Part shown: piece by piece, positions 2,745 through 57,625 of the stretch | Layout: every line of letters starts with the position of its first letter | How positions within the stretch are numbered: position 1 is the first letter of the stretch | Assembly: GCF_001194135.2 (NCBI RefSeq) | Contig: NC_068989.1 | Location: 37,576,186 to 37,639,932 of the forward strand | DNA length: 63,747 bases | Source of the DNA: Octopus bimaculoides | Lineage: Eukaryota | Reading direction: 5' to 3' | Program-made: the position numbers and the translations under genes | The notes under the pieces: generated by a model | The model's database searches: none | Told to the model about the DNA's origin: nothing | What the model saw: only the letters and a program-made list of their open reading frames with translations

Positions 2745-4850
2745 ACGAAATACTCATTAGATTCGGACCATTTAAGTACTTACAACCGTTACTAGATTCA
2801 AACCATTTAACTTGGATTTCATTAGCTTCCTTACCCTTCTGATGTGCTCCTTCTGAATTTTCGTTTTCATTTCTATAGTTCGTACTCTGTCAGATTCTGA
2901 TACTCCTAGATGTTAATAACTCTCTCCTTTCAATGATTTTAATGTCTGACCATCTGGTAATTGGATGCCTTCACTGTTGACTACATGTCCCCTTCCCATG
3001 ACTAATATTGCACACTTATCTATGCTAAATTCTATGCCTACATCTAAGGGGAATCAAACATAAGAAAATATTAAAGTGGATAACGAGTCTTCTTGGAAAA
3101 TTCCTCTTTTGATATCAACCTTCCCTAAGACTGTGTCACCTGAGTAGAGATCTACTTTCCATTTCTTCCAGGCTAAAGGGAATTAATTCTCTTTAATACT
3201 GAATATACTCAGACATTCACTTATCCATGAGTGTGAGATTATGTCATAGGCTTAACTGCTTTGTCTATGTATAATAGATAATGCATTCCTCTAACTTTCT
3301 TTCTACAACCTTTCTGTTCTTCTGGCAATAAATTCTGATTGTCAAGGTGTTCATAAATGCCTTTTGAAAGCATTCCTGTTAACAACTTCTGCACTAATGG
3401 TAAGCGAATGATTGGTCTATAATTGCTAGCTGTATTACCCTTGGTTTTACCTTTCATAATGAATATCTTCTCCCTCTAGTCATCCATTCTAGTATTATTC
3501 CTCCATTAAGGTAATCCTAAAGTTGTTTCCTAAGCCTCCCATGTAAACTGCTAAATATCTTTAGCCAGTACCCGTGATCTAAATCTCGTCCTGGGCCTTT
3601 CAATTCGGCATTTTCTTCAACACTTTACTCATTAAAGCACTAGTTAATCTTAGATCAGGCTGCTTCTCACTCACTATTTCTTCCCTCACTTTCTTTAACC
3701 TTACTGCATCTCCTTTATGATTGACTGGGTTATCCCAAATATTACTCCAGAACTTTCTAGCTTCTTCTGCATTAGGTTTCTCATCTCCAGTACTTTCTTC
3801 TTCACTATTTATTTGGTTATAAAATCTCTTCTGATCTGCCTCAAATCTATTCTGTTGATACTTATCAATTTTTTTCTGATATCTGGAAAGCTTACCTTCT
3901 GCTGCTTTGATACGCTGTTTCAGCTCTTGTATGGCTGTCCCAAATCCTTTCCCTTTGACTAAGTATCTCAAGAGAGGATTTAGTTCTTGTGTTCCCTAAC
4001 TTGTTCAGTTTCTAGACTTCTATTCTACTCAGATCTTAAACACTTCACTTTATTTTGTAATCTCATTTTCCACATTTGCTCTTTTGCAATGTTTCCTTGT
4101 GGAATATCTAATCTTCTTGTAACTACCACCCCTCCTGCAAAGATCAATAAATTAGTGTCTCCTATGTTTTTAATATCTTTCTTACTGATTACAGAATCTA
4201 CTTTCCTAGTCATATCTGGCAGCTTTCTTCTGTTGGTACCTTTTAATGCTGGAAATCTCATTACATCCTGCAGCTCAACTGAAATCTTCTGATCTTCCTC
4301 ACTTAAATCTCTTAAATCACTGGTGCTACTTGTCCGTCGTTATTGGTAGTGTTATTATTATATTTTTTTGGTCTTAGCTGTATCACTTATGTTGTTGTTT
4401 CTCTTTCCTACTGCCTGGTCTTTCTTTTCAAGTTCTCTTATGATCTCCTCCACCTCCAATTCTGTCATCCACTTTCTTCTAATAGTATTAGCTTGATCTA
4501 CTAGTCTCTACTCAGTCACTTTAAACATACCCTTCTCTACCCAAAGTGTTAATAAACGTTTTCTATAGCCCCTTCTTTTAGGTTCACCTTCTAAGTAGCA
4601 TTGCATCACTATCCCATTTTCTTCGCTGATCTACTTCCTCCTCCTTACTTTATTATCTGCTGAGGTCATGACAGCCGTGGTCAGTCTGCATCTTTACTAA
4701 ACCACTGCTGAGCGAGAGACCTTCCCTGAAAAATCCAACCTCATTTTCGCTGTTACACCAGAGTTTCGACGTAAACTCCTGTCTATCATAAACTGAAGTA
4801 AGGTAACGTTCGTCACCATCGTCATCACCACTATCATTTTTCGACATCTG
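2745..4850 (-). mobile_element. R4/Dong-clade (REL-type) non-LTR retrotransposon, N-terminal domain + RT, decayed, 3' truncated
   Basis: Minus-strand peptides: Myb-like 'VMQCYL..EPKRRGYRKRL..LW.EKGMFKVTE.RL.DQANTIRK'; 'FEADQKRFY...KFWSNIW...KKMPN'; 'SNYRPI..LPLVQKLLTG...LLPEEQKGCRK'; 'IKRGIFQEDSLS'. Many stops and frameshifts. Confidence 0.85.
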
Positions 4851-5425: not shown

Positions 5426-6360
5426 GGTTGTCAAGAAAGTTCTTGCGGAATTTTTAATTTTGGTTTTAAATAATGTAATTTCAAATTAATTTTTGTTAAA
5501 TTACTTTGACTTGATATATCATTTTAAAGCCTGATTTTCGCTCTATCTAATCTTGTTACTTGTTTTCTTTTTCAATAATTAGGCCATTTTTTGCGGAACG
5601 TTGAATACAACATGGACAAAAAGCAAATTCACACAATCTTCTTATTCCAGTTCAAGCTAGGCCGAAACGCTGCTGAAACAACTCGCAATATCAACGATAT
5701 TTTTGGCCCAGGAACCACTAATGAACGTACAGCACAATGGCGGTTCAAGAAATTTCGTATCGGTGACGAGAGTCTTGAAGAGGATAAGTGTAGTGGTCGG
5801 CCATCGGATGTTGACAACTAAGAGACTTAGAGGAAGCCAATCCATGCACAGCTGTTCGAGAGCATGCTTCTGAATTAGACATAACGTATACGACAATTTC
5901 CAACCATTTGAAAGAAATTGGAAAAACAAAAATACTTGAGAAATGGGTATCGCAGGAATTGAACGATAACCAAAAAAAAAAACAAAAAAAACGCCATTTT
6001 GAAGTATCGTCTTCCCTTCTTTTACGCAACAAGAACGACTCGTTTCTCGACCGGATTGTGACTTGCGATGAAAAGTGGATTCTTTACGACAACCGGCGAC
6101 GCTCAACCCAGTGGTTGGACGCCGACGAAGCTCCACGGCACTTCCTGAAGCCAAAGTTGCACCAAAAGAAGGTCATGGTGACTGTTATCCTCACTCGTGA
6201 ATTTCTCGCCAAAAACAACATGGTGCCATTTCCACACCAGTCGCATTCACCGGATTTAGCACCTGCAGACTTTCATCTCTTCCTCAAGATAAAACTGCAG
6301 CTGAAAGGTCACCGTTTTAACGCCATTGTCGAGATCCAGAGCAAACCGTAGAAGGTCCCC
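5423..6360 (+). mobile_element. mariner transposase remnant with 5' TIR; frameshifted, internally deleted or chimeric
   Basis: TA followed by 'ttaggttgtcaagaaagttcttgcgg' (Hsmar1-like TIR). ATG at 5612 gives MDKKQIHTIFLFQFKLGRNAAETTRNIN (HTH). Motifs WVSQEL (WVPHEL), TCDEKW and HSPDLAPAD (YSPDLAPSD) are present. Confidence 0.92.
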
Positions 6361-10808: not shown

Positions 10809-11598
10809 CAGGTTGTCCTAAAAAGTGTATACACACTTTAACAACTAATAACTCAGTGTTCATTTCTTTTTAGATTAAACCCATTAGAAAGAATAAAGGG
10901 AGCCAAGGTAAGCTTTAAACAAAGGAAATTTACCCTAAAATACTACCGGAAGTTTAAAAATGCAGTCGAATTCTAAAGACAGTTTAAGAGGAAGTTTGAA
11001 ACTTACAACCACTTGAATTAGAGATAAATTTGAAGCAGATGGAACTAAGAGCGACCGCAAGAGAGGTTCCAGAGGGCCTCAGATGTCGATGAACCGTACA
11101 AATCAAGCAAGTGTATTAAAAACGCTTTGCCAGAGATTGGGAATATCTGTGCAGCAAACGAGACGTGAGATAGAAATTTCAAAACCAAGCGTCCATGGCA
11201 TTTCGAAGTTGTCAGAAAAGTTATTTTCTAAGAATAGGTTATGCTCTCAATGAAGATAATCAGGACTGTGAAGTGTGAAGCTTTGTCAGTAGTACTTGAT
11301 AAAATGTGTAGAAGGTGCCGACTTTCCACGAAAGATTGTGTGGAGTGATGTAGCTACTTCTATATGAAATAGCTCAATTAACCACTACAGTTGCTCCTTA
11401 CTGGGGAGCTGGGGATCCATATATTACAGGTGAACGCCATGTTAACAAGAGTTACAGTACACTGCATCTTAACACCAAAACGATTAATTGGACTAGTCTT
11501 TTATGGCGGTACTGTGAGTGGTCCCATGTATTTGATGCAGCAATCTGTCATGCCAAGCATTCAAGATGGCTTCCAAGATTTGGAATTTATTTCCAGCC
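10809..11598 (+). mobile_element. Tc1/mariner maT/rosa-type (DD37D/DD41D-like) transposase remnant
   Basis: TIR-like 'caggttgtcctaaaaagtgtatacac'. Decayed peptides 'KFEADG', 'KIVWSDVATS' (WSDEA.F) and 'LIGLVFYGGTVSGPMYL..VMPSI' (LIGP.FF.GTV.G..YL). Confidence 0.75.
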
Positions 11599-13150
11599 AC
11601 GTCGACACCTTTCTTTCCGGAAATGATGCCACGTGATCTATTTTTGGCGCTTCTTCGACATCTACATTTCAACTCAAGTGAGATTCATGATGACAGGCTG
11701 CACAAAATACATCCTATCGTTGACGAAGTGGCTGAATATTTCAGAACAGTGTATGTCCCCACACAGGACATTTGTATGGACGAGAGTTTGTGGAAATTCA
11801 AGGGAAGGCTCCGATTCAAACAATACTACCCGACCGAACATGCCTGCTTTGGAATGAAGGTTTATAAAGTATGCCAGTCAACTAACAGAGCCTGTGGGTG
11901 CACGTGGAATTACAAAATCTACACTGGTCAGGACAGATTGGATCTTCCAGCGTCTACTCAAGCATCAACTGATGTGTTGTCGCTGAATGAAAACTTGTTT
12001 GACAAAGGCTACAATATTTATATGGACAACTAGTTTTCTAATCCAGACCTCTTCCTTCAGCTGCAGACAAGGAGAGCTTAATGCCTGTGGAACTGCGAGG
12101 ACGCACAGGAAAAACATGCTGCCTAATCTTCACAAGATAAAACTTCGAAAGGTGGAAACAGCATACCAATGCATTGATAGTGGCATTCTTGCTCTAGTGT
12201 GGAGTGACCTGAAAAACGTCTGCATGTTATCCACAATGCATTCTGCAAGCATGAAGGACGCTAGGAAGCAAGATGCAGACAGTAATGCCATAATGAAACC
12301 GAATGTAGTTGTTTCGTATGATTAAAGGATGAGCGGAGTCGATCGCTCAGATTAGCTGGCGACGACACAAATCGGTGAGAAAATTTGTGAAATGGTACAA
12401 AACAATTTTCTTGTATATAGCTGACATGTGTGTCGTGAACTCACATTTGATTTGGTAGGTGCTTGGCGTTGTGGGGGATGGATTGATATTCAGAAATCTA
12501 TTGTTCCATAAGATGATAGATGCATCAGACCTGCCAAAGTACAGAACGCTGGGACGTCTCCACGCCGGACTCTCTTCTCATCTCATGGTGAAGGGAGCGA
12601 ACATCTTCCTCGACTCATTCCTCGACTCATTCCCCCACCCGCCAAGAAGACAAATGCTTCAAAGAGATGCATAGTATGTAAAACAAAAGGGAAACGTAAG
12701 GAAACTAGATACCATTGTTCACAATGTGATATGTCACTATGTGTGGTACCCTGTTTTGAACTCCACCACACTAAAGTCAGTTTTTGAATTCATGTGATAG
12801 TAAATACATGAAGTTAATCTGAGTTGTGCTGTCGAGTAATCTTTTTCAGGAATAATGCCGTATGAGCGTCCTGCACAGAGATATAGTTTAGGTAAATAAA
12901 CAGTACTTGCACTAAAGCGGTTGATGTAAATGTACGCCGAACATTATCTCGCCCTGAGTGCTGATCTCAATCGGCGCGATTACCGTTGCCTCACGTAGGC
13001 AACCGAATGAATCACCGCCGTAAACTGGTTAAAGCGGTTGATGTAAATATATGCCGAATCACTGTCGTGGGCTAATTGCTGATCTTAGCCGAGATGATTA
13101 CCGTTAATGCAACTGAGTTGCTTGATAAAAAAAAAACCGTTGTCATGGGG
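11599..13150 (+). mobile_element. piggyBac transposase remnant, 5' truncated, with 3' end at GGGG|TTAA
   Basis: MPRDLF...DESLWKFKGRLRFKQY.P, YMDN(stop)FS, CGTAR..RK, KP.VV.SY..MSGVDRSD and the C-terminal Cys-rich 'CIVC..KGKRKETRYHCSQC..LCVVPCFELHH'. Ends 'catgggg' with TTAA at 13151-13154. Confidence 0.92.
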
Positions 13151-14223
13151 TTAAACAATGAATGTTTATCGTTTAGAACGAAGAAAATACAGTTCTGGGT
13201 TCAAATATTTCCGAAGTCGATTTTGTATTTTAGGCATCTAGGTCTGATAAAATAATGTACCAGTTAAGTACTAGGCTCTTATTATCAGCTCTTTCTTTCT
13301 AATCCCACATCTCCAGTCTTTAACTATGTACAAAATTATTATTCGTTTCATTAAAGACTGGTGTGTGGTACAAATGGTAATGCCACGCTTATACTTTCTG
13401 AGTTTACTTCCGCTACTGCGGTTGACTTCCCCGCCAACATTTTCGTGTCGATAAATTAAATATGAGTTAGAATCTATGGTCGGGAACTATCAGATCTGTG
13501 GTTGTTAGAAATCAGTTTGATTTTCCTCTGATTAAGGCTAAGATTGATTTAATCGCTTATATTTTTGCCCTACAAATTTGAGATCATGTGCCAAAGTTAG
13601 ACATCTATTTTCCTCATTACCATTATTTCTCTTCCTTCTGCTCGATATATATATAACTACAATGAAATTTGACAATATCGCTTCTCTATACATGCATGGC
13701 CTAGTGCTGATATAGCAAACCATTATTATTCTCTCCGCTATCGATGAAAGAATTAGCATTACACTAACTCAATTTCCTTCACAGAATTCTTTCATTACAG
13801 GAAAGAATTTTGAGTTTATTGAAAAGGAAATACAATTCTGTTTACCTCTACAGCGTCAACATCCTGAGACATGGAACTAAAGACAAAATAATGTATGACT
13901 AATATGTTTCAGACGATACGAATATCAAAACACATCGCATACGTATACATAGAAGACAAAAATCGATACATGTATGATCAATACTCAATGTAGATCAGAA
14001 TAAATAAATACATAGGACAGGTGTGTGTTTAACCATAGTTTTTGATCTTATAGCCAGGAGGGGAGATAGTTGCCATGATTTTTAGAGCGCTTTCAAGACC
14101 GTCGAGAGTTACCCATTTATCCACTCGGGGTCGATAAAATAGAATACTGGTCAAATTCTAAGGGCGGTGGTATCCACAAACCACGTCCCTTCAAAATTGC
14201 TGGTCATGTGTCTAAATTAGAAG

Positions 14224-14224
<1 letters not shown>

Positions 14225-14281
<57 letters not shown>

Positions 14282-14282
14282 G

Positions 14283-14358
<76 letters not shown>

Positions 14359-14359
14359 C

Positions 14360-14391
<32 letters not shown>

Positions 14392-14395
14392 TATT
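14225..14395. repeat. Long (TTA)n/(TCA)n microsatellite
   Basis: Direct reading; source of the poly-L and poly-I ORFs. Confidence 0.98.
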
Positions 14396-14834
14396 CCAAA
14401 GAAGTAGCGGATCAGTGGAATCATTTGCCCGTTGGCCAAAATGTGCTGGTATTTAGTTGTGGTCTTTTTAATTTCTTCGCTCAATCTCGCTCGAGTTGAC
14501 GTTGTTTTTGACTCAAATACATAGAAGAGACTGACCTCCGGTAAAATCACTTTGGTTTCCAGCTAGCGGCGTTAACCAACTTATCCAATTTACTTTTACT
14601 AGGTATCTCAACAGTTTCTCTCTGCTATTCCCTATTTGTTAATAAGAACACTAATTGCTGACGGGATTACGCTTATTTTGAACTGTTATATTTTAAACAA
14701 TGTGTCAGGGCTATATTACTGGGTAATTTTATAAATTCATTAATTTCATTTTCTTCAGTCATTGGCTGTTGTGGATACTGTAACATTTATGTACTTTTTT
14801 ATATTATAATGGCCATGTCGTTGTGTTAGAAATA

Positions 14835-15260
14835 ATGATTTCAAAATTTGGCACAAGGCCATCAATTAGGGAGGAGTCGATTGATTACTCCAGTACTTCA
14901 CTGGTGTCTTATTTTATCGATCCCGAAAGAATGAAAGAGAAAGTCGACCTCAGTGGAATTTGAACTCAGAATATAAAGGGTAAGATGAAATGCGGCTAAG
15001 CTTTCTATCTGACTAATAATTCTGACTGCTCGTCACCTTAATAATAATGGTTTCAAATTTTGTCAGAAGGGCAGCCATGTTGGGGGAGGGGATGAGTCGA
15101 TTACATCGACCCCAGTGTTTCACTGGTATCTAATTTATTGATCCCGAAATGATGAAAGGCAAAGTCGACCTTGGCGGAATTTGAATTCAGAACCCGAAGA
15201 TAGACGAAATGCCGCTAAGCATTTCGCCCGGCGTGCTAACGATTCTTTTCTATTGTAGAC
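14835..15260 (-). mobile_element. Two tandem SINE family A copies
   Basis: Two head-to-tail copies of the reverse complement of 'gctggcagaatcgttagcacgccgggcgaaatgcttagc...gtcgactttgcctttcatc' separated by taataataat. Confidence 0.85.
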
Positions 15261-15315
15261 ACAAGGCCTGAAATTTGGGGGAGGGGGTTAGTCAATTACA
15301 TCGACCCCAGTGTTT

Positions 15316-16331
15316 GGATCTTTTCCCTTTGAACGGCACATCGAGAAATTAATTTTTTGTAACTAAACACTTTCAAACTTTGGACACTGGTAGAATGTGT
15401 CATATAAAACATCTTTTACTCTTAGTGTTGTTGAGAAAAGTTTATATTTTGAAAGTTATTTCGTGTTAAAGTTGTTGTATTTCTGTAATTTCAACCAATC
15501 AATGACGTGTATTCAGCTGAATAAAATCACTGCCCTTGTTTGTCAACAATAACTATCGGTGGTGTATATTTCGTTTGTTACTGTTATTTACGACATCACT
15601 CGTGTGTTTGTACTGGTTTTAGCTTTAGGGTTTTAGGGTTTGGGTTAGGGTTAGGGTTCGGGTTTTAGGCTCAGGGTCAGGGTTTTAGGGTTAGGGATAG
15701 AGTTTTAGGGTTAGGGTTAGGGATAGGGTTAGGTTAGGGTTAGGGTTAGGGTTAGGGTTTTAGGATTAGGGTTAAGGTTTTAGAGTTAGGATTAGGGTTT
15801 TAGAGTTAGGGTTGGGGGTTTAGGGTTAGGGTTAGGATTAGGGTTGGGATTTTAGGGTTAGAGTTACGGAAAAATGTAGAAAATGAACATATTGGAGGGG
15901 GAGGGGAAAAATGTCTTTCCGAAAGTAGTAGCTGAAAAACAGAAAAAAACAACAAAAGCAGTAGAAATGCACGAACGATTGTGGTGGTGCCATGAAATAA
16001 ACATGCTTCAGATACACTCATTTATTCATACAAACGTAACTATGATGAAATATGTCATAAATAACAGTGACAAACGAAATATACACCGCCGGAAGTTGTT
16101 GTTGACAAACAACAGCAGTAATTATGTTCACCTCAATAGACGTCATTGATTGGTTGAAATTACCGAAATACGACAACTTTAACACGAAATAGCTTCGAAA
16201 ATACAGAATTTTTCAAAAACGCCAAAAGTAAATGATGTTTTATGTGACACATTCTACCTGTACACAAATTTTGAAAGTGTTTAGTTGCAAAAAATTATTT
16301 TCTAAATGTGCCGGTCAAAGGGAAAAGATCC
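15316..16331. mobile_element. Non-autonomous TIR DNA transposon (~280-bp TIRs, 8-bp TSD CAGTGTTT) carrying telomeric repeats
   Basis: Left end GGATCTTTTCCCTTTGAACGGCACAT, right end ATGTGCCGGTCAAAGGGAAAAGATCC. Inverted similarity spans ~15316-15598 vs ~16050-16331. CAGTGTTT occurs at 15308-15315 and 16332-16339. Confidence 0.9.
15615..15868 (+). repeat. Degenerate interstitial telomeric array (TTAGGG with TTTTAGGG/TTAGAG/ATAGGG variants)
   Basis: Direct reading of ~250 bp of TTAGGG-type units. Confidence 0.97.
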
Positions 16332-16564
16332 CAGTGTTTCACTGGTACTTAATTTATCGACCCCGAAAGGATGAAAGGCAAAGTCGACCTCGACGGTATT
16401 TGAACTCAGAACATGAAGACAGACGAAATACCCTTAAACATTTCGTTCGGCGTGCCAACGATTCTGCCAGCTCAACGCTTTCGTCACCATAATAATAATA
16501 ATGATCCTTTCTACTAAAGGCACGATGCAGTTTTGGTCGGAAAGAGCTGAGAGAAAGGAAAAGA

Positions 16565-17221
16565 GTGGGATGGACAAGAAACAATAAATCATATTATCTC
16601 TGGCTGCCCAGTCCTGGCTAAGAAGGAATATATTCACAGACACGACAGAGCTGGGACCTATATACACTGGAAGCTATGCCAACACTATGGAATAACAACA
16701 GAAAAAAGATGGTATAAGCACACGCCGGAAAAGGTCACAGAAAAGGAGAAAGCAACCATACTCTGGGATATGCCAATACACACAGATAGAGAAATTAAGG
16801 CAAATAGACCAGATATAGTTGTCAAAGATCATGAAAGGAAAAATGCTTTCTAATTGATGTATCAATACCAGCAGATGACAACGTTTCCCTAAAAGAAATG
16901 GAGAAACTTTCAAAATACAAAAACCTGAAAATAGAGGTAACTCGAATGTGAAATCTAAAAACAGAAACAATTCCTATCATAGTAGGTGCCTTAGGTATAA
17001 TAAAAAAATATTAAGACAAATACATAACAAAAACACCAAGACTTACAAATATATATAACATACAGAAAATTGCACTACTGGGCACTGCACACATCCTACG
17101 CAAAACACTTTCTATACAGTAACCATAAGAGCATCACAGCAAACCACAGCACATACCCAAGGCACACAGAGCTGCGCTCGGTAGTGAAGTAACAGCACGT
17201 TATAAAAATAAAACTACTGAA
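16565..17221 (+). mobile_element. R4/Dong 3' fragment (CCHC + REL endonuclease + 3' UTR)
   Basis: ETINHIISGCPVLAKKEY..RHD...ILWDMPIHTDREIKANRPDIVV...LIDVSIP...IPIIVGALG...QKIALLGTAHILRKTL, followed by aataatgataataat. Confidence 0.92.
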
Positions 17222-17239
17222 CAATAATGATAATAATAT

Positions 17240-18530
17240 CAGAATGCTGATATCAGAAAGGAGTTCGGACTGAAAAAGTGTGGTGTGTTAGTCTTGAAGA
17301 GAGAGAAAATCAAATGTATGGACAGGCTAGCGATACCGTCGGGGGAGGTTATGAAGCAGATAGATGGGACAGTCTATAGGTACTTGCGGATATTGGAAAT
17401 GGATAAATTGATTGAGAAAGAAATTACACAAAAATTTAAGGTGGAGTATTGCGCAGACTGAGACTGATCCTTAAGTCGAAATTAAACGGATGAAACAAGA
17501 TTGAAGCTATCAACATTAGGGCGGTTTCACTACTAAGATATGGAGCAGGGGTAATCTCATAGTAAGGAGACGAACTAAACATCTTAGACAGAAAGACAAG
17601 GAGGTGCTTTATCTTTGCGGAAGATTGCAAAGATAAAGCACTTTACACGCATTTGAGAATGAATGAAACTAAAGATAGGTGGATAAAGAAAATGACAATT
17701 TCATAGGGATGTTGAAGATAAGATATACAGAGAGAAAATATTGCTATGGATGACTAAAAATGACTTAAAACCGGAAACGGAGGCTCTAATCTGTGCTGCC
17801 CAAGAGGAAGCATTAAGAACTAATTACATCAAATACAGAATAAACAACACATCAGAAAGTGATAAGTGCAGAATTTGTTGACAAAATGGTGACACCGTGT
17901 GACCTATTATCAATCAATGTACTCCACTAGCCCAGAAAGAATATAAAAGACGTCATGACAATATAGCAAGGATAGTCCATTGGGCACTTTGCAACATGTA
18001 TGGACTTGATAGAGTAAACAAGTATGGACTTGATAGTGGTGCGAACATAAACCCGAAGGCATCATTGAAAGTGATAATGCAAAAATCCTATGGGATTTTA
18101 TGATTCAGTGAGACCATGAGATAGAGAATAGGAAACCAGACATAGTGTTAATTGAGAAACAAAGCAAACGATGCTGGATCATAGACATAGTATGCCCATC
18201 TGACAACAAGGTATGCGATATGAAAGAAATAAAAGTCGATAGGTATAACAGGTTAGCTTGGGAGGTTCAGCAATTGTGGTCGATGAAAAAGGTGGGAGTA
18301 GTGCCAATAATTGTCGGAACCCTGAGAACAAGTGAGTAAAAATCTTGAGAAGTACACATTACGAATAGGGACTGCAATAATGGTAGAACACTTACAGAAA
18401 ACAGCACTGCCTGGAACCGCTCGAATACTCCGGATGGTGCTCGAAAAATAAGAGGTGTTACCTTAGTTCACTGGTAGTGAACAGCTGACACCGTTGTACA
18501 TCTCCAGTGTTAGAAGCTATGCAAAGATAA
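17240..18530 (+). mobile_element. Second R4/Dong family, RT C-terminus to REL endonuclease, decayed
   Basis: EFGLKKCG, YRYL.ILE, ETEALICAAQE.ALRTNY, CRIC, RRHDNIAR, KILWDF..Q..HEI.NRKPDIV, VVPIIVGTL, QKTAL.GTARILR. Ends at 'gataatgaaataataat'. Confidence 0.92.
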
Positions 18531-21150: not shown

Positions 21151-21360
21151 TCAGCGCGCTGGCAGAATCGTTAGCACACCAGGCAAAATGCTTAGCAGCA
21201 TTTCGTCCATCTTTACATTTTGTGTTCAGATTACGTCGAGGTCAGCTTCGCCTTTCATCTTTTCGGGGTCGATTAGAATAAGTACCAGTTGAGCACTGGC
21301 ACCGATGCAACCAACTTATCTTCTCCACTGAAACAGTTGGCCTTGTACCAACATTTGAAC
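21150..21360 (+). mobile_element. SINE family A
   Basis: 'gcgctggcagaatcgttagcacaccaggcaaaatgcttagc...ttcggggtcgattagaataagtaccagtt'. Confidence 0.88.
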
Positions 21361-26094: not shown

Positions 26095-26530
26095 AAGGCG
26101 GCGAGCTGGCAGAATCGTTAGCACGTCGGGCGAAATGCTTAGCCGTATTTCGACCGTCGCTACGTTCTGAATTCAAATTCCGCCGAAGTCGACTTTGCAT
26201 TTCATCATTTCGGGGTCGATAAATTAAGTACCAGTTGCGTACTGAGGTCCATGTAATCGACTACCCTCTCTCCGAAATTTCAAGCCTTGTGCCTATAATA
26301 GAAAGGATTATTGTTATTAAGTTGGCAAGGTGGCGCAATCATTAGGAAGACAAAATGCTTAGCGACATTTCGTCTTCTTTACGCTGTGAATTCAAATTCC
26401 GCCGAAGTCGACTTTGCTTTTCAATCTTTCGGGGCCGATTTGAATAAGTACCAACTGAGTACTGCGGTCGATGCAATCGACTTACTCACACCGCTCAAAA
26501 TTACCGATCTTGTATCAAAAATTTGAAAGC
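26095..26530 (+). mobile_element. Two tandem SINE family A copies
   Basis: The well-preserved copy at 26095-26308 has A-box-like TGGCAGAATCG, B-box-like TTCAAATTCC and tail gaaaggattatt. A more diverged copy follows. Confidence 0.92.
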
Positions 26531-27119
26531 ATTGCAATTATTCTCTTCAGATCGATAAAGTAACTATCAGTGATAATACTTATTTAATTGAATAAATATA
26601 TGTATTTATCATTAGTCTAAGGCGAAGTCAAGATGTCAACATAACATTTGATTTAATAAAATATCATAAAATTCTATAGTTAATTCAACTATTCATAAAC
26701 CTATTATAAATTCCATTCGTATTTATGACCTCTTCCATGCTTCTCGAAATTTTTCTTTTATTCTCTCCAACACCGCTATCTTCTTCAGCTTTTCTCTTTT
26801 CCTTTACATGATTTTCTCCATTTCTTCTTCAATCGATTTTCTCTTTTATATTCGTTCCTTTCTTCTCGCCATGCTAACTACCTGTTGACAAAATCCATAT
26901 CGTTGACCGCTTAGCCTTCAGCATTTGTTCCTTTTCTCTTTAATTCCAAATTTCTTTTATTTCTCTGGTTTAACTTCAACACATGTTGACACCCTACTTC
27001 TTTGTACGTTGCCATACTGTGATGATGTGCCTCACTCCACTCTTTCCTTCGCCTTGTCTTCTCCTTTGTATCTTTCTTTCTCCCTTTTTCTCTCTCAAAA
27101 CCGCGCACGTGCGCTTACA

Positions 27120-27535: not shown

Positions 27536-27757
27536 CGCAACTAGCTATTTCAAAGTTAGCTAGTTCGCAGTTAATTAGTTCGCAGCTAACTAGTTCACAC
27601 CTAGCTAGTTCACAGTTAGCTAATTCACAATTACCTACATCATAGCTAGGTAGCTCAAAACTAGCTAGTTTGCAGCTAGCTTATTCACAACTAGCTAGTT
27701 CGTAGTTAGCTACTGCCCAGTTAGTTATTTCATAGCTTGCTGCTTGCTAGTTCGCAG
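27536..27757. repeat. 15-bp minisatellite (~14 units, consensus GYTAGCTAGTTCRCA)
   Basis: gttagctagttcgca gttaattagttcgca gctaactagttcaca cctagctagttcaca ... Confidence 0.9.
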
Positions 27758-30966: not shown

Positions 30967-32290
30967 CCCTTGGTTTACCAGAGAAAATGTATGTCACTAA
31001 TTACCAACAGGGTCCAATGGACCCAATATTTTTCTCTTAATTAAATTTTATTCAAGCCACCACTATTTCTTAGCTACCTTATATATGCCTTCAGGTGAAT
31101 GAAGAATTAGTTTCTCACAAATTTTAATAAAAGAAAATACAGCTCACAGGATATATTATAAATTTTTAAAATTACAAAAGTACAGAATTACAGCTCTTCA
31201 TGGCAGTGAATGCAGAGAACATTGGAACGTTCTTGGCAAACATGGATTTACAATTCTTACTTGTTGTATGAGTTCTGCTGTCTTTTTCAGGGCCACACAA
31301 AGGACATCTTTCCTTTTTTCTTTGGCTGAGGAATCTCAAATGAGGTTGAAGTACGTCTTCTTTTCTTGTTAGAACTAGAAGATTGTTTGTTGTAGTCTTG
31401 TTTAGCATTAACTCCAGCAAGTTCCTTTCGTAACTAAATTAAACACTGTCTTCTTTTATCCTTGAAACTTTGCAAGTGAAGCTGTTTAGCAACAATGAAA
31501 GCATTCACTGCGCTTATATCAATCATGTAGAATAAAACGATAGGCCATCTTCGAGTCATTGTTTTGCAAATGTATGTCCTTACCATCTTATCTAGGGTAT
31601 CCACTCCTACTTTTGTTTTGTTGTAACATGTAATAACTTCAGGTTTCTTTTCAGCACTTTTCGAATCAATTGAAGGCTGGGAGTGTATTGTACTCATAAG
31701 TGTGACAACATAATTTTTCTTGGGACAATAAGATAGGATCATAGAATCCTTTTTAAATCCAAATATTGTGCTGTTGATTTTTCTTTCTTTTCCATTTGTG
31801 AAAGCACTTGGAAGTTCAACTCTATTCTTTCTAATTGTATCAACTAAAGTAGTTTTCTTGCTAAGCAGCTTTCGAGCCAATCTTAGACTTGAAAAATATT
31901 ATCGCAAGTTATATTGCGACCAGTATTTTCAAGTTCTTTTACTAGGTTTTCAACAAATCTTGAACTTTGACTTGTCTTTTTCCCTTTTACTGGGGTTTTT
32001 CCAGTATAGATTTGCATTTTCCAGGCATAAGATGTTTCACTGTCGCATATTGCCCAAATTTTAACTCCATATTTCCCTGGTTTTGAAGGAATATATACCC
32101 GGAATGGGTATGTTTATCAGCTGTCATGTATGAACTTGGAACATATCCATCTTGCAAATTCTGAATCCACATTTCAAATACTTCTCTTATGGGCTCCATT
32201 TTATCATCACTTTTCTTTTTTCGTTTTTCACTAGCATCATCAAAACGCAATACTTGTAAAATCTGACCAAATAGTTTTCAAAATTTTGGA
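30967..32290 (-). mobile_element. piggyBac (PGBD4-like clade) transposase remnant with 3' TIR at TTAA|CCCTT
   Basis: LRFDD...EPIREVFE, TIRKNRVELP, KKPEVITCYNKTKVGVDTLDKM, TRRWP..LFY.MIDISAVNAFIV and a C-terminal Cys-rich remnant. TTAA at 30963-30966. Confidence 0.92.
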
Positions 32291-48515: not shown

Positions 48516-48951
48516 AAGGCGGCGAGCTGGCAGAATTGTTAGCACTCTCGCGAAATGCTTAGTAGCATTTTACGCTCTGAGTTCAAATTTCCACCGAGGT
48601 CGACTTTACTTTTCATCCTTTTGGGGTCGATAAAATAAGTACCATTTGAGTTCTGGGATCAATGTAATCGACTTACACTCTCCACTAAAATTGCTGGTTT
48701 TCTGCTAAAATTTGAAATCCTTATTTAAGAGTACATTTAAAGTGCTGTGTTGGCAGAGTAGTTAGTACACAAGGCAAAATGCATAGCGGCGTTTCGTCCA
48801 ACTTTACGTTCTGAGCTCAAATTTTACTAGGCTCGACTTTCATCCCTTCATGATCAATAAAATGAGTACCAGTTAAACGCTAGGGTCAATGGATGTAATC
48901 GACTTACCCCCTCCCACAAAATTGCTGGCCTAATGCCAAAATTTTAAACTG
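48516..48951 (+). mobile_element. Two tandem SINE family A copies framed by an 18-bp direct repeat
   Basis: ATATCTAAGACTACATTT at 48498-48515 and 48952-48969; a 2-mismatch copy lies between the SINEs (~48722-48738). Confidence 0.9.
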
Positions 48952-57111: not shown

Positions 57112-57320
57112 AAGTGGCAACCTGGCAGGATCGGCAGCACACCGAGCAAAATGCCTAGAGGCACTTCATCCGTCTTCACGTCCTGAGTTTAAGTTCCGCC
57201 GAGGTCGACTTTGCCTTTTACCGTTCAGAGTCGATAAAATAAGTACCAACCGAATACAGGGTCGGTATAACCGACTAATTCCCACCTCCAAAATTGCTGG
57301 TCTTGTGCCAGTGTTTGAAA
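57112..57320 (+). mobile_element. SINE family A nested in an opposite-strand SINE A, with 19-bp TSD
   Basis: ccaatacttgactagtata (57093-57111) vs ccaatatttgactggtata (57321-57339). Confidence 0.82.
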
Positions 57321-57419: not shown

Positions 57420-57625
57420 AGGTGACGAACTAGCAGGTGCATTAGCATGCCGGGCAAAATGCTTAGCGGATTTTCATCCGTCTTTATGTTCTGAGTTCAA
57501 ATTCCATCCAGGTCGACTTTGCCGTTCATTCTCTCGGAGTCGATAAAATAAGTACCAGTTGAGCATTTAGGTCAGTGTCATCGACTTACCGCTTCCCCCT
57601 AAAGTTGCTGATCTTTTGGCAAAAT
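57420..57625 (+). mobile_element. SINE family A
   Basis: 'gccgggcaaaatgcttagcgg...gtcgactttgccgttcattctctcggagtcgataaaataagtaccagtt'. Confidence 0.88.

What the first reader, a model, noticed from the sequence alone, without database searches (positions are those of the whole stretch)
15316..16331. Telomere-repeat-bearing DNA transposon (long TIRs, exact 8-bp TSD)
Seen: a 1016-bp unit with ~280-bp imperfect TIRs starting GGATCTTTTCCC, an exact CAGTGTTT duplication on both sides, insertion into the middle of a SINE whose halves rejoin cleanly, and an internal ~250-bp TTAGGG-type array. The array therefore arrived as transposon cargo, not as a chromosome-fusion scar. Established: TTAGGG is the ancestral metazoan telomere repeat, such arrays can form G-quadruplexes and bind telomere proteins, and GG-starting long TIRs with 8-9-bp TSDs are typical of Merlin (hAT, P and Mutator are alternatives). 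Inference: this family could spread interstitial telomeric sites, recruit shelterin-like factors, or prime telomerase healing at excision breaks, loosely analogous to ciliate telomere-bearing elements. TTAGGG-like tracts are known inside some other transposons, so novelty needs checking.
Basis: partly seen in the sequence, partly recalled or inferred. Interest (0 to 1): 0.8.

Follow-up and report, generated by a model that had tools for sequence, protein, structure and literature searches.

The report
Octopus transposon carrying telomere-like repeats
This is a real but old and non-coding "cut-and-paste" DNA transposon copy in the Octopus bimaculoides genome that holds a decayed telomere-like repeat array; it explains one internal telomere-like site, but nothing here shows that it has any telomere function.

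Summary
Window 15316-16331 is a 1016-bp element with 281-bp terminal inverted repeats (86.4% identical, 17 bp perfect at the tips, starting GG). It has an exact 8-bp duplication, CAGTGTTT, on both sides. It sits inside a SINE that realigns without a gap to nine other SINE copies once the element and one duplicate are removed. The element has no coding capacity and folds as a long hairpin. The window is Octopus bimaculoides chromosome CM046609.1.

The internal 248-bp array is telomere-like but not telomerase-like. It is 83% identical to perfect (TTAGGG)n, and its longest perfect run is four units. A TTTTAGGG variant recurs mostly every 20 nt, so the array grew by copying a 20-nt unit. All units point the same way, so a chromosome-fusion scar is excluded.

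Structure fits the Merlin superfamily (GG termini, 8-bp duplication, TIR length in range), and Merlin is abundant in this species. No transposase partner could be tested, and other superfamilies with 8-bp duplications remain possible.

The key claim, that the family carries the array as cargo, could not be tested because no second copy was reachable with these tools. A telomere function is pure speculation. I file it as an ordinary tandem-repeat-bearing non-autonomous transposon with an uncommon repeat motif.

The parts
15308..15315 (.). Left copy of the 8-bp target site duplication, CAGTGTTT
   Evidence: Identical to 16332-16339. The uninterrupted neighbouring SINE copy has this octamer once.
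15316..15596 (+). Left terminal inverted repeat (281 bp), starting GGATCTTTTCCCTTTGA
   Evidence: It is 86.4% identical to the reverse complement of 16052-16331, K2P 0.151, with the 17 terminal bp perfect.
15597..15618 (+). Short unique spacer between the left TIR and the array
   Evidence: TIR homology ends at 15596; the array starts at about 15619.
15619..15866 (+). Telomere-like array of 248 bp, with the G-rich strand on +. It mixes TTAGGG with a recurrent TTTTAGGG variant, giving a 20-nt higher-order unit TTTTAGGG-TTAGGG-TTAGGG.
   Evidence: It is 83% identical to perfect (TTAGGG)n, with 24 gap columns. There are 20 exact TTAGGG and 0 CCCTAA. The longest perfect run is 4 units. TTTTAG occurs 8 times, at spacings of 32, 20, 20, 55, 20, 20 and 52. 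There are 5 canonical G4 motifs.
15867..16051 (+). Unique internal segment (185 bp, A-rich), non-coding
   Evidence: It has no similarity elsewhere in the window, and its ORFs have no Pfam family above threshold.
16052..16331 (-). Right terminal inverted repeat (280 bp), ending ...TCAAAGGGAAAAGATCC
16332..16339 (.). Right copy of the target site duplication, CAGTGTTT
15251..15315 (-). Left part of the interrupted host SINE. This is probably the SINE's 3' part, if its B-box-like GAGTTCAAATTCC on the - strand marks its orientation (inference).
   Evidence: it rejoins with 16340-16510 into a full SINE colinear with 9 other copies. The copy is 12.8% from the local consensus.
16340..16510 (-). Right part of the interrupted host SINE

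Best explanation
Window 15316-16331 is one old, immobile copy of a non-autonomous cut-and-paste (TIR) DNA transposon in Octopus bimaculoides.

Shown: a transposase supplied in trans must have cut the target with an 8-bp stagger inside a SINE, since repair duplicated CAGTGTTT.

Inferred: by its structure (GG termini, 8-bp TSD, 281-bp TIRs) the element most likely belongs to the Merlin superfamily, which is abundant in this species.

Its interior holds a telomere-like minisatellite that I take to be a passive passenger. The array was built by duplication (slippage or unequal exchange) of a 20-nt unit, TTTTAGGG-TTAGGG-TTAGGG. It was not built by telomerase adding hexamers, and it has since decayed about as much as the TIRs. 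The array is therefore old. It was probably already present when, or soon after, this copy inserted. Tandem arrays of this kind are common inside mollusc non-autonomous elements. Its only demonstrated effect is to create one degenerate interstitial telomere-like, G4-prone site that has nothing to do with chromosome fusion.
For: - Transposon insertion: TIRs, TSD and a clean empty site reconstructed from nine SINE paralogues.
- Non-autonomous: the longest ORF is 88 aa and no Pfam family passes threshold. The element folds as a hairpin with the array in the loop.
- Old: TIR K2P is 0.151, about 7.5% per arm. This is below the 12.8% divergence of the host SINE copy from its consensus, so the order of events is consistent.
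- Merlin-like: terminal 5'-GG, 8-9-bp TSD and TIRs of 24-462 bp are the defining structural traits (PMC8101967), and all three are met. O. bimaculoides has 191 Merlin transposase hits, and Merlin is nearly cephalopod-restricted among molluscs.
- Array made by unit duplication, not telomerase: TTTTAG occurs 8 times, with four of seven spacings exactly 20 nt. In 5000 simulations of a decayed perfect (TTAGGG)41 array, the mean was at most 0.06 occurrences and the maximum was 2. The TRF score is best for period 20.
- Array not recent: the 20-nt units are 85-90% identical to their consensus, similar to or worse than the per-arm decay of the TIRs.
- Tandem-repeat-containing MITEs are documented in molluscs (PMC3879986).
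Against: - Only one copy was seen. Repetitiveness, the family consensus and whether the family carries the array are all unknown.
- No transposase or autonomous partner links the termini to Merlin. Zisupton and Novosib (both present in cephalopods), MULE, P and hAT can also give duplications of about 8 bp (from my own knowledge, not tested here).
- The TIRs of a master copy need not have been identical, so the age estimate is soft.
- The comparison of unit decay rests on only four clean 20-nt units.
- At 1016 bp the element is larger than a typical MITE.
Confidence: 0.7

Rival explanations
1. Local expansion only. The family does not carry the array. A short T/A/G-rich seed in the interior of this copy expanded in place after insertion, by slippage or unequal exchange.
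For: The 20-nt higher-order structure shows the array grew by duplication of local units. The array starts with imperfect motifs (TTTTAG-CTTTAGGG) that could be a seed. The window is extremely rich in microsatellites, so the genome is prone to expansion.
Against: The units are as decayed as the TIRs, so any expansion must have happened early. Arrays inside mollusc MITEs are usually a family feature (PMC3879986). With no second copy this could not be tested.
Confidence: 0.3
2. Telomerase-mediated repair. A double-strand break inside the already inserted element was repaired with insertion of telomeric repeats, giving a 'short ITS' as described in vertebrates.
For: Such one-step insertions exist, and some interrupt repetitive elements (PMC8537989). 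The array has a single orientation.
Against: Short ITSs are 'exact or almost exact' repeats. This array is 83% identical to (TTAGGG)n, and its recurrent, mostly 20-nt-spaced TTTTAGGG variant cannot arise by decay of a perfect array. The mechanism has not been shown in molluscs.
Confidence: 0.07
3. Functional telomere-repeat vector. The family spreads interstitial telomeric sites that recruit telomere proteins or prime telomerase at excision breaks.
For: TTAGGG is the only experimentally determined cephalopod telomere motif (PMC13218726). The array contains 5 canonical G4 motifs and 20 exact TTAGGG.
Against: There is no evidence of conservation or selection. The array is decayed and the longest perfect run is 24 bp. 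It is internal, not terminal as in ciliate telomere-bearing elements. The copy is old and immobile. No other interstitial telomeric site occurs in the 63.7-kb window.
Confidence: 0.04
4. Same kind of element but another superfamily: a non-autonomous derivative of Zisupton, Novosib, MULE/Mutator (where long TIRs are typical), P or hAT rather than Merlin.
For: Zisupton and Novosib are present in cephalopods and MULE and hAT in all molluscs analysed. An 8-bp TSD is not unique to Merlin, and long TIRs are typical of MULEs (from my own knowledge).
Against: The conserved GG terminus, the 8-bp TSD and the TIR length together match the Merlin definition. The termini lack the hAT-type YARNG start (from my own knowledge).
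Confidence: 0.35
5. Chromosome-fusion scar or relic telomere.
For: None beyond the presence of telomere-like repeats.
Against: The array is enclosed by the TIRs of an element whose flanks rejoin into one SINE. It has a single orientation with no head-to-head CCCTAA/TTAGGG junction. It is only 248 bp long.
Confidence: 0.01

Closest known systems
Merlin superfamily DNA transposons and their non-autonomous derivatives (Feschotte 2004; survey in PMC8101967)
   Same: Terminal 5'-GG on both TIRs, an 8-bp TSD, and a TIR length (281 bp) inside the reported 24-462-bp range. The host species has the largest Merlin transposase count among the protostomes listed (191).
   Different: No transposase, and no partner sharing the termini, was found or could be searched for. 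I found no report of telomere-like arrays inside Merlin elements, although internal tandem repeats of 12 bp and 163 bp are reported in some Merlin copies (PMC8101967).
Tandem-repeat-containing MITEs of molluscs (DTC84 of Donax trunculus, pearl elements of Crassostrea; PMC3879986)
   Same: A non-autonomous element in a mollusc whose centre is a short tandem array flanked by arms with inverted repeats. The transposon acts as a 'cassette' for repeats.
   Different: DTC84/pearl have short inverted repeats, a putative AA target duplication, core repeats of satellite size and a separate microsatellite. Here the TIRs are 281 bp, the TSD is 8 bp, and the repeat is a hexamer-based 20-nt unit. It is a different family and probably a different transposition mechanism.
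Foldback-type elements with long TIRs and internal or terminal tandem repeats (e.g. Tetris of Drosophila virilis, PMC4079207)
   Same: Long inverted arms, hairpin-forming structure, association with tandem repeats.
   Different: In foldback elements the repeats are usually part of the arms. Here the arms are unique sequence and the array sits in the loop.
Short interstitial telomeric sequences inserted at double-strand breaks (PMC8537989), and degenerate ITS tracts of metazoan chromosome arms (1,229 in C. elegans, PMC9071541)
   Same: A short array in a single orientation, at an internal euchromatic site, unrelated to fusion.
   Different: The array is embedded in a transposon and has higher-order 20-nt structure. 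It is not near-exact.
Telomere-repeat-bearing mobile elements: ciliate Tel-1/TBE-type elements (Cherry and Blackburn 1985, cited in PMC2831315) and telomere-associated Penelope-like elements (PMC4522978)
   Same: A mobile element that contains the host's telomere motif.
   Different: In those elements the repeats are terminal and part of the integration or end-maintenance mechanism. Here the array is internal, 303 bp from the nearest end, and plays no visible role in transposition.

Membership tests
Merlin superfamily (non-autonomous member) | TIRs with conserved terminal 5'-GG-3' | tested here: met
   Both ends read GGATCTTTTCCCTTTGA. Criterion from PMC8101967.
Merlin superfamily (non-autonomous member) | 8- or 9-bp target site duplication | tested here: met
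   CAGTGTTT on both sides, present once in the uninterrupted SINE paralogue.
Merlin superfamily (non-autonomous member) | TIR length 24-462 bp | tested here: met
   281 bp.
Merlin superfamily (non-autonomous member) | Mobilised by a DDE_Tnp_IS1595-type transposase from an autonomous element sharing the termini | not testable with these tools
   There is no DNA search of the octopus genome. The element has no transposase ORF, and the window holds only mariner and piggyBac remnants.
MITE / non-autonomous TIR element (structural class) | TIRs, TSD and no coding capacity | tested here: met
MITE / non-autonomous TIR element (structural class) | Multiple dispersed copies in the genome | not testable with these tools
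   One copy in the 63.7-kb window and none in about 115 kb of other loci, of which only about 48 kb is octopus (L063 and L064). This places essentially no limit on copy number.
MITE / non-autonomous TIR element (structural class) | Small size (usually under about 800 bp) | tested here: inconclusive
   The element is 1016 bp, of which 248 bp is array. 'Non-autonomous TIR element' is the safer label.
pearl / DTC84-type tandem-repeat MITEs | Modular build: core satellite-like repeats plus a microsatellite, short inverted repeats, AA target duplication | tested here: not met
   8-bp TSD, 281-bp TIRs and a hexamer-based array, against the description in PMC3879986. Analogous, not a member.
Fusion-type interstitial telomeric sequence | Head-to-head (TTAGGG)n/(CCCTAA)n arrays at a junction of two chromosome segments | tested here: not met
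   0 CCCTAA in the array, and the flanks rejoin into one SINE.
Short ITS inserted by telomerase at a break | Exact or almost exact telomeric hexamers inserted in one step | tested here: not met
   83% identity with 24 gap columns, and a TTTTAGGG variant recurring mostly at 20-nt spacing that simulated decay cannot explain. The one-step test needs an empty element copy, which is not available.
Telomere-bearing elements of ciliates (Tel-1/TBE type) | Telomeric repeats at the element termini | tested here: not met
   The termini are unique sequence, and the array lies at 15619-15866, 303 bp inside the left end.

The most novel reading that the evidence does not exclude
A Merlin-type non-autonomous transposon family in octopus (possibly in cephalopods generally) carries the telomere-like 20-nt array in all or most copies. 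It would then be a major source of the interstitial TTAGGG-like, G4-prone sites on octopus chromosome arms. That would be a cut-and-paste route for dispersing telomere-like DNA, for which I found no report in the held paper library.
Probability: 0.25. Interest if true: 0.55.

Novelty: new member of a known kind. Interest (0 to 1): 0.3.

Why it matters
If the array is a family feature, many interstitial telomere-like sites in octopus assemblies would be transposon-borne. They should then not be read as relics of chromosome fusion when reconstructing cephalopod karyotype evolution. They would also be false positives for telomere-motif-based scaffolding, which uses TTAGGG (PMC13218726). Such sites could be dispersed G-quadruplex-prone or fragile sites. 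As it stands, one decayed copy shows only that at least one such site has a transposon origin. That is useful for annotation but is not a new mechanism.

Tried and rejected
**1. Second copies in the window.** blastn of the element against the window and the 17-nt terminus with up to 3 mismatches found only the element itself.

**2. Public DNA scans with TIR k-mers.** Two patterns against metagenome contigs and one against viral contigs gave 0 hits. The 17-mer against GTDB genomes gave 61 hits. About 69 are expected by chance for a 17-mer in 596 Gb on both strands (my arithmetic). blastn showed no real extension beyond the seed: the longest was 36 nt at 86%. None of these collections holds cephalopod genomes.

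**3. Protein route to other copies.** A 79-aa reading frame through the TIR found no candidate. A full HMMER search with the 55-aa TIR ORF found two unrelated repetitive proteins whose scores are inflated by 4-9 weak repeats. These were rejected.

**4. Orthologous locus in another octopus.** I tried the only called gene nearby, the piggyBac-like ORF at 11566-12033. Its best non-self hit is 70% identical, a paralogue, so no orthologue was retrievable.

**5. Random sampling of octopus DNA.** Using mariner homologues I fetched L063-L069, about 115 kb. Only L063 and L064 are octopus. There was no TIR, internal-region or array hit. I abandoned this because every protein maps to one contig, so the yield is far too small to be informative.

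**6. Rfam and tRNA scans of 14000-17500.** Nothing was found.

**7. Literature.** Nine searches found no description of this octopus family, and no TIR transposon with an internal TTAGGG array. This covers only the open-access library held here and not Repbase or Dfam.

**8. Palindromic assembly artefact.** I considered and rejected this, because the arms differ at 38 positions and by one indel.

Full report
**Source.** The only called gene near the finding, a piggyBac-like ORF at window 11566-12033, is on record in NCBI assembly GCA_001194135.2, chromosome record CM046609.1, at about 37.59 Mb. From my own knowledge this accession is Octopus bimaculoides. Consistent with that, the closest named relatives of window ORFs are from Octopus sinensis and O. 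bimaculoides. The window is 36% G+C, contains 2173 Ns and is full of microsatellites and SINE copies. By coordinate conversion the element lies at about CM046609.1:37,591,501-37,592,516.

**Check of the observation.**
- The unit 15316-16331 is 1016 bp.
- Its ends are inverted repeats, 15316-15596 and 16052-16331. They span 281 aligned columns, with 242 of 280 compared positions identical (86.4%). There are 21 transitions, 17 transversions and one gap, K2P distance is 0.151, and blastn E is 1.4e-91.
- The outermost 17 bp, GGATCTTTTCCCTTTGA, are identical at both ends. Allowing up to three mismatches, they occur nowhere else in the window except one 3-mismatch chance site.
- Immediately outside both ends lies CAGTGTTT, at 15308-15315 and 16332-16339.
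- After removing the element and one octamer, the flanks form a 236-bp sequence. It aligns without a gap at the junction to nine other copies of an abundant SINE in the window. The adjacent copy reads CCCCAGTGTTTCACTGGTA, with the octamer once.

This is a textbook reconstructed empty site. The insertion, the TIRs and the 8-bp target site duplication are real.

**Coding capacity and shape.** The longest ORFs in the element are 88, 86 (running out into the SINE), 71 and 59 aa. None matches a Pfam family above threshold. As single-stranded DNA the element folds into one long hairpin with the array in the loop. It is a non-autonomous element.

**The array.**
- TRF reports 15633-15866 as period 6 with only 72% matches and 13% indels. 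The best score is for period 20, consensus TTAGGGTTAGGGTTTTAGGG, with 82% matches and 4% indels.
- A global alignment of 15619-15866 to perfect (TTAGGG)n gives 211 matches in 253 columns (83%), with 24 gap columns.
- There are 20 exact TTAGGG and no CCCTAA, and the longest perfect run is four units.
- The variant TTTTAG(GG) occurs eight times, at spacings of 32, 20, 20, 55, 20, 20 and 52 nt.
- In 5000 simulations of a perfect 41-unit array decayed with 7-14% substitutions and 0.5-4% indels, TTTTAG appeared on average at most 0.06 times and never more than twice.

The recurrent variant is therefore not decay noise. The array grew by copying a 20-nt unit (TTTTAGGG-TTAGGG-TTAGGG), which is minisatellite behaviour (slippage or unequal exchange), not hexamer-by-hexamer synthesis by telomerase. 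The clean 20-nt units are 85-90% identical to their consensus. That is as decayed as, or more decayed than, each TIR arm (about 7.5%), so the array is not a recent expansion. The array contains 27 GGG runs and five non-overlapping canonical G-quadruplex motifs. Outside the array, TTAGGG and CCCTAA occur 12 and 6 times in the window. That is about what the base composition predicts (my arithmetic), so there is no second interstitial telomeric site.

**Order of events.** The host SINE copy is 12.8% from the consensus of ten local copies. This is more than the roughly 7.5% per-arm TIR divergence, and so consistent with SINE insertion first and transposon insertion later. The age is soft, because a master element's TIRs need not be identical.

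**Which superfamily.** Merlin elements are defined structurally by TIRs of 24-462 bp with a conserved terminal 5'-GG-3' and by 8- or 9-bp TSDs (PMC8101967). This element meets all three criteria. The same survey found 191 Merlin transposase sequences in O. bimaculoides, the highest count named among protostomes. A mollusc-wide survey found Merlin, Zisupton and Novosib almost restricted to cephalopods (PMC10294476). So a Merlin partner is plausible. The decisive feature, an autonomous element with the same termini encoding an IS1595-type DDE transposase, could not be tested. The window contains only mariner and piggyBac remnants. Other superfamilies that make duplications of about 8 bp remain possible: Zisupton, Novosib, MULE, P and hAT (from my own knowledge). 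I put Merlin at roughly one half.

**Cargo or local growth.** No tool here searches cephalopod genomes by DNA. I tried:
- the window itself;
- k-mer scans of metagenome, viral and prokaryote collections, which gave nothing, or chance-level hits without extension;
- two protein-space searches with TIR reading frames, which gave nothing or spurious repeat proteins;
- the orthologous locus through the neighbouring piggyBac ORF, where only a 70% paralogue exists;
- about 115 kb of other loci fetched through mariner homologues, of which only about 48 kb is octopus, with no hit.

What one copy does say is limited. The array is enclosed by the TIRs, points one way, and is about as old as the copy. 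A fusion scar is therefore excluded, and a recent local expansion is unlikely. Carriage by the family and an early local expansion remain open. Insertion by telomerase at a break, as described for vertebrate short ITSs, which are 'exact or almost exact' (PMC8537989), fits poorly with the 20-nt unit structure.

**Comparison with what is known.**
- Non-autonomous elements whose centre is a short tandem array are well documented in molluscs (DTC84 and pearl, PMC3879986). They are also known in other animals (Tetris, PMC4079207; oyster Helentron derivatives, PMC7492417; titles and abstracts). This element works like those, as a mobile cassette around a repeat. It is not a member of them, because the TSD, TIR length and repeat type all differ.
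- Mobile elements that contain telomere repeats are known, but the repeats are at their ends and serve integration or end maintenance. Examples are the ciliate Tel-1 type (Cherry and Blackburn 1985, cited in PMC2831315) and telomere-associated Penelope-like elements (PMC4522978). Here the array is internal.
- TTAGGG is the only experimentally determined cephalopod telomere motif (PMC13218726).
- I found no paper describing this family, or a TIR transposon with an internal TTAGGG array. Repbase and Dfam could not be consulted.

**Verdict.** The cargo claim is untested, and the telomere-function ideas are unsupported. I file it as a new member of a known kind, a tandem-repeat-bearing non-autonomous TIR transposon, with moderate-to-low interest (0.3). 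A simple genome-wide BLAST of the TIR would settle the one reading that could raise its interest.

Noticed in passing
window 14845-15050, 15056-15250, 15251-15315+16340-16510, 21158-21355, 26095-26300, 26350-26540, 48516-48712, 48739-48945, 57122-57315, 57442-57625 and others: An abundant SINE of about 200 bp (at least 12 copies in 63.7 kb, 13-21% from the local consensus). Three copies lie head-to-tail just left of and around the element. It has a B-box-like GAGTTCAAATTCC on the - strand, but ARAGORN and Rfam do not recognise a tRNA in 14000-17500. One copy each was also present in the fetched O. bimaculoides and O. sinensis loci L063 and L064.
   Followed up: partly
window 11566-12325 (+) and 31434-31880 (-): Two piggyBac-type transposase remnants (PF13843). 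The first is split into overlapping 155-aa and 112-aa ORFs. The closest relatives are 70% and 54% identical O. sinensis proteins.
   Followed up: partly
window 5908-6351 (+): A mariner transposase remnant (PF01359) that looks internally deleted. Relatives annotated 'SETMAR-like' occur in O. sinensis and O. bimaculoides.
   Followed up: partly
window 16620-16802 (+), and 3600-3971 (-): Fragments that look like non-LTR retrotransposon ORF2 pieces. One example is ...YIHRHDRAGTYIHWKLCQHYGITTEKRWYKHTPEKVTEKEKATILWDMPIHTDREIK directly right of the host SINE. The identification is from memory only; Pfam gave no significant family for 3600-3971.
   Followed up: no
TIR positions 170-193: window 15485-15508 and its mirror near 16139-16162: The best conserved block of the TIRs is a 24-nt stretch, GTAATTTCAACCAATCAATGACGT, identical in both arms. 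It contains CCAAT and TGACGT motifs. It could be a transposase-binding site or chance conservation.
   Followed up: no
window 27538-27732: A 15/30-nt tandem repeat (TAGCTAGTTCACAGT, about 12.7 copies, 71% matches) of unknown origin.
   Followed up: no
whole window: Very high microsatellite density (49 TRF rows at score 60 or above, many ATT/TAT, AC and GTAT arrays) and 2173 Ns in several gaps, often next to microsatellites. Array lengths in this assembly, including the telomere-like one, may therefore not be exact.
   Followed up: no
L065 (ENA ERZ21867824 ctg122155l): A 359-kb contig in an ENA assembly encodes a mariner 76% identical to the window's copy but lacks the octopus SINE. It probably comes from another animal, which was not identified.
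   Followed up: no
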